Source of the DNA: Sphaerodactylus townsendi
Taxonomy: Eukaryota
Assembly: GCF_021028975.2 (NCBI RefSeq)
Contig: NC_059438.1
Location: 24,986,001-25,050,000, forward strand
Length of the DNA: 64,000 nt
Direction of reading: 5' to 3'
Below, one piece after another: positions 34,301 through 37,300 of the stretch. The notes under the pieces were generated by a model. The model saw only the letters and a list, made by a program, of their open reading frames with translations. It was not told the DNA's origin and did no database searches. Position numbers and translations under genes: made by a program. The stretch's first letter is position 1, and every line of letters begins with the position of its first letter.

Positions 34301-37300
34301 ATCCTTTACCTGGAAGTAAGCTCGGTTGCTGGCAATGGGGCTTGCTTCTGAGTAAACCCTCCTAGGGTCATGATTCACCCGTTGGAAGAGTTGCACGGTT
34401 GCTTCAAAGCAAAGCCACCGACTACCACCAAGCTTACTCCTGAGTAACACGTGCCTTGGAGCCAACCGTTTTTTCTAAACTAAAACCTCAGTATTCAGGG
34501 TACATTGCCATATTGGCACTTTGCAATAAATAAGTGGGTTTTGGGTTGCAATTTGGGCACTCCGTCTCGAAAAGGTTTGCCATCACTGATCTAAGCGAAG
34601 CAACGTGGGACACTGACCTGATTCCTCGCGAGGCAACTCCTTGCAGCCCTTCAGAGCAGGAGAGAGAGGAAACCTACCCAGGGTAACATCTGCCAGTACA
34701 AAGAAGGCAAGAAAATGCAGCAGCTGCAGAACAGCTCTCCTTACCCCTTTCATGGTCACTGCAGTCTGGACCTTGGAGGCCACCGCGTCCACTCGGGAAG
34801 CCATGCGGAGCCAGTTGACGCCCTCGTTCTTCTTCCGGATGGCATTCTCTGCGTAGACACGGGCACACTCCACGTTCTTCTGCTGAAGGGCCTGGAGCAC
34901 ACCAAGGCAAGGAGGAGGAGCAGGGTCAGCCCCGAGCCAGAATGGCCTTCCAGTGGCCCACCTGCAAGTTCTCTGCACGTGCAGCTTAACAGTCTGGGTC
35001 TGGACCGGAACTCTGCCCCAAGCTCTGCTCACCTATTAATCAGAGGGAACAGACTTCCTGACAGCAAAGCAGAGCAGATGCTGCCACTCTGGCACCTGCA
35101 GGGGCAAAGACTGGGCAGCTCCAGAACGTGTGCATCCACCATTCCTTGGAAGGAACTGTAGATGTCACACACTAAGTCTAGGGGTCCATCTGAAAACCCG
35201 AGAATAATTCCCTCACCCTCAGGAGACTGCCTCCAATGAGGTGGACCACGGGGAGGCCTTCCAGCACTGCTTCCTACGCTCAAGTGGAAGGAGTTCTGCA
35301 TACGCCCCATCTTTCTGCTGCCGTCTCTCACATGGCAATTAGAGGAACTTAGAGAACCTAAGAGGAACTAGAGGAACCTAGAGGAACTTAGAGAACCCTG
35401 CCCAACCTAAGAGGAACCTAAGAGGAACCTAAGAGGAACCTAAGAGGAACCTAAGAGGAACCTAAGAGGAACCTGCCCAAAGGACTCAGAGCTTGCATGA
35501 TGCAGTCAGAAGTGGAGATTCTCGGGAGAACGACGACGCTGCAATGGATGTGTGCCCAGGAGAGGCCAGGCTGCTTGAGGTCAGGCCAGGGCTCCAGAGA
35601 TGGGCCTTGGAAGGGGCAGGCAGGAAGAGGAAATGCAGCACATTTTAGATGCCAAGGACTAGAAACTTGACGTTGACACAGGGGAAGCGGTGAGCCACGG
35701 TGGGGGTTCAAGGAAAGCAGCTCTCTCCAATGTCTCCCAGGACAGCCCCAGCAGCAGCAACTCTCCTCCCCAGCATCAGGTTCCGTTACCTTCTTGACTT
35801 TGGCTTGCTCAGCTTTGGAATCCTTTTCCGCCTTCTTGGAGAGCTTCTCCAACTGCTTGGCTGTGAACTGGAGAGAAGGATGTGGTGAGGGGCTACGGGG
35901 GTCTGCGGAAAAGCCTGCCCTCTTGCAGTCCCCAGAGATCAAGCAATCCGCAGCAGCCCAGACACAGAGAGAAAGGCAGCTGGTGCTCTGGAGGGCACAT
36001 CCAACTGCAGGCATTAACAGGGCTCAGGTGGAAAAGCAGTTTATGCAGTGCCAGTTTTCCTGTTTAATGGGGAGAGGGCAGAAAGCATACCCCTCCAGAT
36101 GGAGACCAGAGGCTGAAGGAGTCATTGCCTTCCCGCCAGAGGGCTGAGAATCCCAAAAAGCAACAGTCCATCTGCCTGTGCGCACTAGAGACGTCACAGG
36201 CAGGCCGTGCTATGGTTGGGACCTCCAGTAGATCTATTACCCATTTCACAGGGGAAGAGGAGACTTACCTCCTGGGGGGAGTACATAATGGGAAGGCACT
36301 CGGGCTCCACAAAGGCCCCCCTCACTCATGGTGGCTGCAGCCCCAGACTCTGCCAGCAGAACACTCTTGACAACCCAGTGGAGTGACCTGGCCAAGAACC
36401 CATCAAGACCAGCACGGGGAGTCCTAACTAGAGGGTGCGGGAGGGAGACCTTCATCAGACCTGCACTCACCTTTAACTGGAAGAGAGTGTCTGTGAAGAG
36501 AAAGAAGAAGGTGGTTGGAAAATGGCCAGGACAAAGAGAGGGCTAAGTATTGTCGAAGGCTTTCACGGCCGGAATCACTTGGGTGCTGTGTGGTTTCCGG
36601 GCTGTATGGCCGTGTTCTAGCAGCATTCTCTCCTGACGTTTCGCCTGCGTCTGTGGCTGGCATCTTCAGAGGATCCTCTGAAGATGCCAGCCACAGACGC
36701 AGGCGAAACGTCAGGAGAGAATGCTGCTAGAACACGGCCATACAGCCCGGAAACCACACAGCACCCAGAGGGCTAAGTGTTTTGATTTCTGCTGGAAACA
36801 GCCTGCAAAAGATGGCGGGGTGATGATGAAATGGACACTCATTGTTCTTAGCCCCTTCACATAATTTCTACCACACAGAGATCCAATCTGTGCACCCATT
36901 TCCACAGATCTGGAAAAATTCCACGCCTCTGACAGAGCCCCTTGGGGATGGGGCGGTATATAAATTTAACAATAAATAAAATAAATAAATACGTTTAGAA
37001 CTCAATGCTAAAATGTAGAACTGGGGAACACATACAGTGCTATACAGAAAGCAAACTTCTGAAAACGTTAAGCTGGTGCCCACAATCAGAATATTTTTCC
37101 TGCCCTGCCATTCCAGGAAAGCAGCAGCCACATGCTGGAGGAGAGCTTTGGCGCCTATCATGAACCAAGAGAACCAGGAAGGTGTTCCAGTCAGGACTGG
37201 GAAGACACCTGGCTCAAAACCTCTTCCTCTCCCTCACCTTCCTCACAAGGTGAATGTGAAGATAAAATAGATAAGAGACTGAGAAATCCGTTGTCCTGAA

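What the first reader, a model, noticed from the sequence alone, without database searches (positions are those of the whole stretch)
36537..36778. Perfect 188-bp palindrome carrying two hammerhead ribozymes next to the 20-nt CHMP1A exon 2
Seen: 36580-36767 is a spacer-less, mismatch-free palindrome centred on GGATCC, with a 31-nt one-sided tail and a 12-bp TSD. Each strand reads TCCT-CTGAAGA-TGCC...GGC-GAAAC-GTC-AGGA. Both arms share a variant (ACAGACGC) absent from the copy at 22.8 kb (ACAGATGC), so one arm was copied from the other. The fold-back point is the GATC just 5' of the ribozyme. Established: Penelope-like elements carry minimal hammerheads (palindromic helix III, active mainly as dimers) in their terminal repeats and often have an inverted repeat copy. 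Inference: this is a young snap-back-primed mini-element reduced to ribozyme plus tail. It puts a 94-bp RNA hairpin about 90 nt upstream of the acceptor of a frame-critical micro-exon and should be cruciform-prone in DNA.
Basis: partly seen in the sequence, partly recalled or inferred. Interest (0 to 1): 0.85.

Follow-up and report, generated by a model that had tools for sequence, protein, structure and literature searches.

The report
Young palindromic Penelope retrotransposon stub
The perfect 188-base palindrome is a real, recent insertion of two head-to-head stubs of a Poseidon-type Penelope-like retrotransposon in CHMP1A intron 1; this is a known insertion layout for these elements, not a new ribozyme device.

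Summary
Positions 36580-36767 form a 94+94 nt, mismatch-free, spacer-less palindrome, with a 31-nt tail on one side and a 12-bp target-site duplication.

Contigs from two related organisms run straight from 36536 to 36767. Exactly the element plus one duplication copy is missing there, so this is a genuine lineage-specific insertion.

Each arm is the −10 to +84 stretch around the start codon of a Poseidon-type Penelope-like element (PLE). The first 38 codons are 66% identical to Poseidon_Ac of the green anole. The arm carries the minimal hammerhead core that overlaps that ATG. The arms end at +84 and +115, which match the two published internal reverse-transcription start sites that define the PLE "tail".

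An inverted 5'-truncated copy, a one-sided 31-bp tail, a variable duplication and a junction palindrome are all published PLE hallmarks. This scan reached the same verdict for sibling elements elsewhere in this genome.

- Each strand carries only one hammerhead motif, and it is locked in a 94-bp duplex. No Rfam hammerhead model matches.
- The copy lacks the RNA region needed for mobilisation, so it is a dead stub.
- Snap-back priming is not shown. Priming from both nicked strands fits at least as well.
- An effect on the 20-nt CHMP1A exon 2, 89 nt away, is untested.

The parts
36537..36548 (.). Left copy of the 12-bp target-site duplication, AGAGGGCTAAGT.
   Evidence: The empty-site contigs of X3 and X7 keep a single copy.
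36549..36579 (-). 31-nt PLE "tail", covering ORF positions +85 to +115 when read on the minus strand (…AGTGATTCCGGCCGTGAAAGCCTTCGACAAT). Its outer end is the distal RT start site.
   Evidence: Searches show the same tail in the copies at 22870-22900 and 27167-27198. Its position matches the 111-118 nt RT start of Poseidon_Ac. Loose ends of many other copies fall at 36547.
36580..36673 (-). Left arm. Read on the minus strand it is the sense PLE sequence from -10 to +84 around the start codon. ATG is at 36663-36661, the hammerhead core at 36669-36635, and the predicted cut lies after C36635. This is the copy that is sense in the CHMP1A pre-mRNA.
   Evidence: Its translation is 25/38 identical to the Poseidon_Ac N-terminus, E = 8e-18.
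36674..36767 (+). Right arm. It is the sense PLE sequence from -10 to +84 on the plus strand, with no tail. ATG is at 36684-36686, the hammerhead core at 36678-36712, and the predicted cut lies after C36712. Its outer end (+84) is the proximal RT start site.
   Evidence: An X1 contig covering 36743-36960 crosses the arm/flank junction.
36767..36778 (.). Right copy of the 12-bp target-site duplication.
36471..36490 (-). CHMP1A exon 2, 20 nt, coding (D)TLFQLK. The acceptor AG is at 36491-36492 and the donor GTGAGT at 36470-36465.
   Evidence: The other CHMP1A exons were found on the minus strand at about 40.47, 35.8, 34.8, 33.4, 32.6 and 31.3 kb.
22434..22900 (+). Sibling hairpin copy of the same family. 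The arms are 192 nt and 98% complementary, with a partly palindromic 56-nt centre. It has the same tail on one side (22870-22900), the same short-arm end, and a 13-bp duplication AGACTGGTTTTGG.
27075..27198 (+). Older single-arm copy (79% identity) with the tail. Its 5' end is at about -9.
21456..21541 (+). Older single-arm copy (86% identity) without the tail. It ends at the +84 site, and its hammerhead core is mutated (GGTGAAACATC).

Best explanation
It is a 218-bp, dead-on-arrival insertion product of a very abundant Poseidon-type Penelope-like retrotransposon (PLE). It consists of two head-to-head copies of the stretch around the element's start codon.

The PLE enzyme made a staggered cut in CHMP1A intron 1, which produced the 12-bp duplication. 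DNA copying of the element's RNA began at the two internal start sites known for this family: +115 on one side, which gives the 31-nt tail, and +84 on the other. Copying ran back to about -12, just upstream of the hammerhead.

Inferred step, about 50% likely: each nicked strand primed its own cDNA. The two cDNA ends then annealed through their terminal self-complementary GATC and were filled in, giving a spacer-less perfect palindrome. The alternative, self-priming by one cDNA followed by endonuclease trimming, is about 30% likely.

The hammerhead motifs are passenger sequence. There is one per strand, each is a helix-III-less type that needs a partner, and here each is locked in a 94-bp duplex. 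Self-cleavage is therefore unlikely, and the copy cannot transpose again.

Its only plausible present-day effects are side effects. One is a long double-stranded RNA hairpin in the CHMP1A pre-mRNA. The other is a fragile palindrome in the DNA.
For: Shown:
- Perfect 94+94 palindrome, tail and duplication.
- Exact empty sites in two related organisms whose flanks differ by 2.0-2.4% in substitutions.
- Arm-plus-tail translation 25/38 identical to the Poseidon_Ac ORF start, E = 8e-18.
- The arm ends at +84 and +115 match the two published RT start sites and the 30-40 bp tail.
- The PAc protein cleaves and extends both DNA strands in vitro.
- An inverted 5'-truncated copy, a 31-bp one-sided tail, a variable duplication and palindromes at the inversion junction are described for PLEs.
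- A second hairpin copy in the window has the same two outer ends but a different fold point.
- Reads from other copies run past the centre into the upstream pLTR, so the fold at GATC is private to this copy.
- Summed word depth over the element is about 4-6 x 10^4 times that of single-copy flanks. This shows an abundant family; it is not a copy number.
- Both 3' ends of the staggered cut are directly followed by antisense cDNA sequence (read from the sequence).

Not independent evidence: another follow-up in this scan reached the same reading for sibling elements (s1-740868).
Against: - The interior of the palindrome (centre and left junction) rests on the assembly. Short-read contigs from X1 confirmed only the right junction. 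X1 may be the assembly's own sample.
- No Rfam hammerhead model matches at E up to 10.
- Priming from both strands is inferred from only two hairpins plus in-vitro data. It would also need both cDNAs to carry the same C variant.
- The literature favours self-priming for junction palindromes.
- No full-length PLE from this genome was examined.
Confidence: 0.85

Rival explanations
1. Snap-back (self-primed) origin. A single cDNA primed at +115 reached about -12, folded back on itself and copied itself. The second arm was then trimmed or joined at +84.
For: The arms are identical and share a private C variant. Arkhipova et al. 2013 interpret palindromes at PLE inversion junctions as self-priming. 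Craig et al. 2021 attribute the one-sided tail to endonuclease-mediated resolution.
Against: A turn with no loop cannot form within one strand, and the only self-complementary centre is the 4-nt GATC. The second arm stops exactly at the second published RT start site in both hairpins of the window, which snap-back does not predict without an extra cleavage step. Both duplication copies are directly followed by antisense cDNA sequence.
Confidence: 0.3
2. Assembly or library fold-back artefact. The palindrome does not exist in the animal's DNA.
For: Perfect palindromes can arise from chimeric fold-back reads. PLE inverted structures are known to trouble assemblies. The centre was not independently read here.
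Against: The block is bounded by a 12-bp duplication. Exactly that block plus one duplication copy is absent from the orthologous site in two other organisms. An X1 short-read contig crosses the right arm/flank junction with 0 differences. The outer ends match known PLE termini. An artefact would not create a duplication or family-specific ends.
Confidence: 0.03
3. A functional ribozyme or double-stranded RNA module that regulates CHMP1A, through self-cleavage of intron 1, control of exon-2 splicing, or production of small RNAs.
For: The hammerhead core is intact on the pre-mRNA strand. The hairpin is 94 bp and lies 89 nt from the micro-exon acceptor. Rfam miRNA-precursor models give sub-threshold hairpin hits.
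Against: The insertion is absent from two related organisms, so it is not conserved. The motif is sequestered in a perfect duplex and lacks helix III. PAc-type hammerheads are inactive without the element's protein. The miRNA hits score 36-59 bits against gathering thresholds of 65-100 and follow from any long hairpin. The 58 nt between the element and the acceptor, which contain no AG, are left intact.
Confidence: 0.05
4. A fold-back DNA transposon or MITE with terminal inverted repeats, rather than a retroelement product.
For: It has a palindromic body flanked by a duplication.
Against: The arms are homologous to the ORF start of a PLE. One end carries an asymmetric 31-nt tail. The duplication length differs between copies, 12 and 13 bp. 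Single-arm copies with the same 3' ends exist.
Confidence: 0.02

Closest known systems
Poseidon_Ac (PAc), the Penelope/Poseidon-clade PLE of Anolis carolinensis (Arkhipova 2006; Frangieh et al. 2024, PMC11167929)
   Same: The ORF start is homologous (25/38 aa). A minimal hammerhead overlaps the ATG, with the cut site 26 nt after the start codon. Insertion ends fall at about +84 and +115, the two RT start sites, giving a 31-nt tail.
   Different: It is a different, diverged family in another reptile genome (N7 = A rather than G; an A·A mismatch in helix II). This copy keeps only -10 to +115. It has no RT or GIY-YIG ORF, no direct pLTRs, and lacks the +116 to +172 RNA region needed for template use.
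Canonical PLE insertion architecture: an inverted 5'-truncated pLTR copy plus a one-sided tail (Arkhipova et al. 2013, PMC3846280; Craig et al. 2021, PMC8557442)
   Same: Head-to-head inverted copies, a 31-bp tail on one side only, a duplication of about 8-15 bp, and a palindrome at the inversion junction.
   Different: This is an extreme case. Both copies are truncated at the same nucleotide, so the whole insert is one perfect, spacer-less 188-bp palindrome with no internal body.
Minimal PLE hammerheads (min-HHR; Cervera & de la Peña 2014, PMC4209133)
   Same: The cores C3-A9 and G12-A14 are present, with an extra nucleotide between A9 and G10.1, a G10.1-C11.1 pair, a short 4-bp helix I, a long helix II, and a palindromic ACGU in place of helix III. 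That paper also reports pairs of motifs on opposite strands 100-700 bp apart.
   Different: Here the two motifs are separated by only about 10 nt and are exact complements, so each is masked by the other in any transcript.
L1 twin priming (Ostertag & Kazazian 2001; cited from my own knowledge)
   Same: Both 3' ends of a staggered target cut prime cDNA, and the products join by microhomology to give an inverted structure.
   Different: L1 twin priming yields an inversion with a deletion or duplication of one RNA, not a head-to-head palindrome. Here, initiation is at two fixed internal sites.
Animal non-LTR retrozymes (Cervera & de la Peña 2020, PMC7229834; Li et al. 2026 preprint)
   Same: They are non-coding, PLE-derived and carry hammerheads.
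   Different: Retrozymes are direct tandem repeats with two or more hammerheads on the same strand, which release circular RNAs. This element has one motif per strand and no tandem repeat.

Membership tests
Penelope-like element (Penelope/Poseidon clade) insertion | Sequence homology to a curated PLE | tested here: met
   The arm plus tail translates to 38 aa that are 66% identical, without gaps, to the Poseidon_Ac ORF N-terminus, E = 8e-18. The upstream pLTR of the sibling copy has the same TATATATA…CTCTGA(A/G)GATG layout.
Penelope-like element (Penelope/Poseidon clade) insertion | [quoted passage not shown] | tested here: met
   The tail is 31 nt (36549-36579). The ends lie at ORF +115 and +84, compared with the published 111-118 and the tail boundary.
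Penelope-like element (Penelope/Poseidon clade) insertion | Variable-length target-site duplication from a staggered GIY-YIG cut | tested here: met
   The duplication is 12 bp here and 13 bp at the sibling copy. Empty sites with one copy were found in two organisms.
Penelope-like element (Penelope/Poseidon clade) insertion | An adjacent inverted 5'-truncated copy | tested here: met
   Head-to-head arms, 100% complementary.
Penelope-like element (Penelope/Poseidon clade) insertion | An RT plus GIY-YIG ORF and direct pLTRs (an autonomous, competent copy) | tested here: not met
   Only -10 to +115 is present, so this is a truncated product and not an element capable of transposition.
Hammerhead ribozyme (type I, minimal PLE variant) | Conserved core CUGANGA…GAAA…UH with helices I and II | tested here: met
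   The sequence reads UCCU-CUGAAGA-U-GCCAGC(loop)GCAGGC-GAA-ACGU-C-AGGA. A loose descriptor gives 4 hits in the window, all in this family, against 0.44 expected. The features match Cervera & de la Peña's criteria.
Hammerhead ribozyme (type I, minimal PLE variant) | A match to an Rfam hammerhead covariance model | tested here: not met
   No hammerhead family was reported at gathering score over the window, or at E up to 10 over 36450-36850. This is expected for motifs without helix III, but it remains a negative result.
Hammerhead ribozyme (type I, minimal PLE variant) | Self-cleavage at GUC | not testable with these tools
   The related PAc motif cleaves only when its protein is present. Here the motif is inside a perfect 94-bp duplex.
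Animal non-LTR retrozyme | Direct tandem repeats with hammerheads on the same strand | tested here: not met
   There is one motif per strand, and no direct repeat other than the duplication.
microRNA precursor (Rfam mir-2041, mir-1294 and others) | A score at or above the family's gathering threshold | tested here: not met
   The hits score 36-59 bits against thresholds of 65-100. They occur on both strands and are generic long-hairpin matches.

The most novel reading that the evidence does not exclude
The element is a natural footprint of two-sided target-primed reverse transcription by a dimeric PLE enzyme. One nicked strand initiated at +115 and the other at +84. Both cDNAs ran to the 5' end of a pLTR-initiated RNA: a TATA box lies at -48 to -41 and an Inr-like TCAGATC has its A at -13. 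The cDNAs were then joined through the terminal GATC. If a genome-wide census showed that hairpin copies systematically have one tailed and one tail-less arm and a recurrent fold point near -12, this would give in-vivo evidence for how PLEs build their inverted repeats and one-sided tails. That question is described as open in the PLE literature.
Probability: 0.3. Interest if true: 0.5.

Novelty: new member of a known kind. Interest (0 to 1): 0.3.

Why it matters
By itself this is one more truncated PLE insertion, and the family is present in very large numbers in this genome.

Its value is as an unusually clean specimen:
- The arms and the duplications are undecayed.
- The empty site is known.
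- The two outer ends sit on the two RT start sites mapped in vitro.

It and its many siblings could therefore be used to test how PLEs make inverted repeats and one-sided tails.

It is also a rare natural case of a long, perfect, spacer-less palindrome persisting in a vertebrate gene, 89 nt from a frame-critical 20-nt exon. That makes it a possible natural test for palindrome instability, and for tolerance of long intronic double-stranded RNA. No effect has been shown.

Tried and rejected
- **Rfam, whole window at gathering score:** nothing found.
- **Rfam, 36450-36850 at E up to 10:** only sub-threshold miRNA-precursor and other chance hits driven by the hairpin; no hammerhead family.
- **Searching the paper's supplements for exact strings of this copy:** no hit, because Poseidon_Ac differs in sequence. 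Reading the GenBank file directly solved this.
- **RNA evidence for CHMP1A splicing, editing or ribozyme ends:** the only raw RNA run laid (X21) belongs to organism D, which has the empty site. The joint tables were also swamped by repeats, so nothing could be learned.
- **Heterozygosity in X1:** This stays unresolved.
- **A preferred 5' end near -10:** the old copy at 27075 agrees. The 21.5-kb copy is ambiguous, because a possible 8-bp duplication TAA(T/C)AAGA moves its 5' end to about +2. The many joints at 36672-36675 are partly an effect of the reference diverging from the family there, so they are not counted as evidence.
- **Not done:** the CHMP1A exons were not joined into a spliced model, and no taxon identification of the coded organisms was attempted.
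Full report
**1. The observation**

- Positions 36580-36673 and 36674-36767 are exact reverse complements: 94 nt each, 100% complementary, no spacer.
- No other spacer-less perfect palindrome with arms of 10 nt or more exists in the window.
- To the left lies a 31-nt non-palindromic tail, 36549-36579.
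- The whole 218-bp block is bracketed by AGAGGGCTAAGT at 36537-36548 and 36767-36778.
- Each strand carries one copy of UCCU-CUGAAGA-U-GCCAGC…GCAGGC-GAA-ACGU-C-AGGA.
- Both arms have C in ACAGACGC, where the three other copies in the window have T.

**2. The gene context**

CHMP1A lies on the minus strand. Exon 1 ends in ATGGACG near 40471. The 20-nt exon 2 (DTLFQLK) is at 36471-36490. Further exons, read exon by exon and not joined, lie at about 35.8, 34.8, 33.4, 32.6 and 31.3 kb.

The hairpin base is 89 nt upstream of exon 2 and the element edge is 58 nt upstream. The stretch between them has no AG before the acceptor.

Because the exon is 20 nt, skipping it would shift the reading frame.

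**3. It is a real, lineage-specific insertion**

The flanks and element were found in several coded runs. When the contigs were laid on 35700-40550, the results were as follows.
- Organism B (X3, record 9) and organism D (X7, record 16) each have one contig that runs up to 36536 and continues at 36767. Exactly 230 bp are missing, which is the element plus one duplication copy. Their flanks differ from the window by about 2.0-2.4% in substitutions.
- X1 (organism A) shows no differences over about 3.9 kb. It is probably the assembly's own species or sample, so it is not independent. It has a contig covering 36743-36960 that crosses the right arm/flank junction.

An artefact would not generate a duplication with a matching empty site. 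However, the centre of the palindrome itself was not read independently.

If the insertion were as old as the split from B or D, about 2 differences between the arms would be expected. None is seen (P about 0.1-0.15). With five CpG sites per arm, this points to a younger age.

The X1 junction contig has depth 40.5, against 85 and 73 for neighbouring contigs. That could mean heterozygosity, and I could not resolve it.

**4. What the sequence is**

The literature search led to Frangieh et al. 2024 (PMC11167929), whose File S1 gives the Poseidon_Ac consensus.
- Read in the sense direction, each arm starts 10 nt before an ATG. With the tail it encodes [38 protein letters not shown]. This is 25/38 identical, without gaps, to the start of the Poseidon_Ac ORF (E = 8e-18).
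- As published for PAc, the ATG is formed by A9, the extra U and G10.1 at the start of stem II. The GUC cut site lies 26 nt after the start codon.
- The paper shows that reverse transcription starts internally at two adjacent sites. One is 111-118 nt into the ORF and the other is 30-40 nt upstream, and the "tail" is the sequence between them. Here the tailed arm ends at +115 and the other arm at +84.
- The sibling hairpin at 22434-22900 has the same two ends but folds about 200 nt further upstream. The single-arm copies at 27.1 kb (with tail) and 21.5 kb (without tail) use one end each.
- Arkhipova et al. 2013 and Craig et al. 2021 describe the same layout as typical PLE anatomy: an inverted 5'-truncated copy, a 31-bp tail on one side, a variable duplication, and palindromes at the junction.
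- Summed word depth over the element is roughly 4-6 x 10^4 times that of single-copy flanks. This shows abundance, not a copy number.
- This scan holds 141 notes mentioning hammerheads in this genome. One follow-up (s1-740868) reached the same verdict on other DNA.

**5. The hammerhead claim**

The core and the extra features that Cervera & de la Peña 2014 list for minimal PLE hammerheads are all present. These are the nucleotide between A9 and G10.1, the G10.1-C11.1 pair, the palindromic 15.2-16.2 positions, a short helix I and a long helix II.

Against that:
- No Rfam hammerhead model matches.
- The motif has no helix III and needs a partner.
- The related PAc motif cleaves only with its protein.
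- In any transcript of this locus, the single sense motif is paired over its full length to its antisense twin. The 341-nt context folds at -226 kcal/mol, with z = -21.

"Two ribozymes" therefore means one motif per DNA strand, and cleavage here is unlikely.

**6. How the palindrome arose**

Shown from the sequence: each duplication copy is followed directly by antisense cDNA sequence. One starts from +115 and the other from +84, and the two meet at GGATCC. The parental sequence reads AGATCC, so only GATC is shared between the arms at the centre.

Reads from other copies run through this point into the upstream pLTR, so the fold is private to this copy.

Inference: PAc cleaves and extends both strands in vitro and uses both start sites on either strand. 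A turn with no loop cannot form within one strand. I therefore favour two cDNAs, one per nick, annealing through their terminal GATC and being filled in (about 50%).

It explains the shared C variant more simply.

The fold point lies just downstream of a TATA box (-48 to -41) and an Inr-like TCAGATC. This suggests that both cDNAs may have reached the 5' end of a pLTR-initiated RNA. This is untested.

**7. Function**

The copy ends at +115. The published minimal template needs the first 172 nt of the ORF. The copy is therefore not a mobile mini-element.

It is absent from relatives, so it is not a conserved regulator.

Possible side effects were not tested here. They are a 94-bp intronic double-stranded RNA, which would be a good ADAR substrate, and a cruciform-prone, breakage-prone DNA palindrome. 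Both suggestions come from general knowledge. The only RNA reads available came from an organism with the empty site.

**8. Verdict**

- This is a new member of a known kind. Interest is modest, raised slightly by the cleanness of the specimen for testing the PLE insertion mechanism.

Noticed in passing
window 22421-22913: A second hairpin copy of the same PLE family: arms 192 nt and 98% complementary, a 56-nt partly palindromic centre, a tail at 22870-22900, and a 13-bp duplication. It starts about 200 nt downstream of the stop codon of a SNAI-type zinc-finger exon (coding sequence about 22020-22230). The differences between its arms are transitions, consistent with an older insertion.
   Followed up: partly
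window 36743-36960 (X1 contig): The contig crossing the right junction has word depth 40.5, against 85.3 and 73.2 for neighbouring single-copy contigs in the same run. The insertion, or a haplotype block around it, may be heterozygous.
   Followed up: no
window 38454-38939, 39426-39749 and 39912-40397: Three stretches of CHMP1A intron 1 have summed word depths of 10^6-10^7 in all three DNA runs and are also abundant in RNA reads. They belong to other, even more abundant repeat families. Two of them share a near-identical segment (about 38657-38749 and 40088-40180).
   Followed up: no
window 21631-21866: A 26-nt inverted repeat (TACCGTGTTTCCCCGAATATAAGACA, 92% complementary) encloses three direct repeats of a GTCTTATTTTC.GGGGATGTCTTAT unit of about 44 nt. 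It looks like a MITE or SINE-like element, directly next to the old PLE copy at 21456-21541.
   Followed up: no
window 36672-36675 (joints): Many contigs from other genomic copies join the -10 to -12 position of one arm to varied positions of an inverted arm, some with a few extra letters between. This hints at many asymmetric fold-back copies and perhaps a recurrent fold point. It is partly an effect of mapping to this reference.
   Followed up: partly
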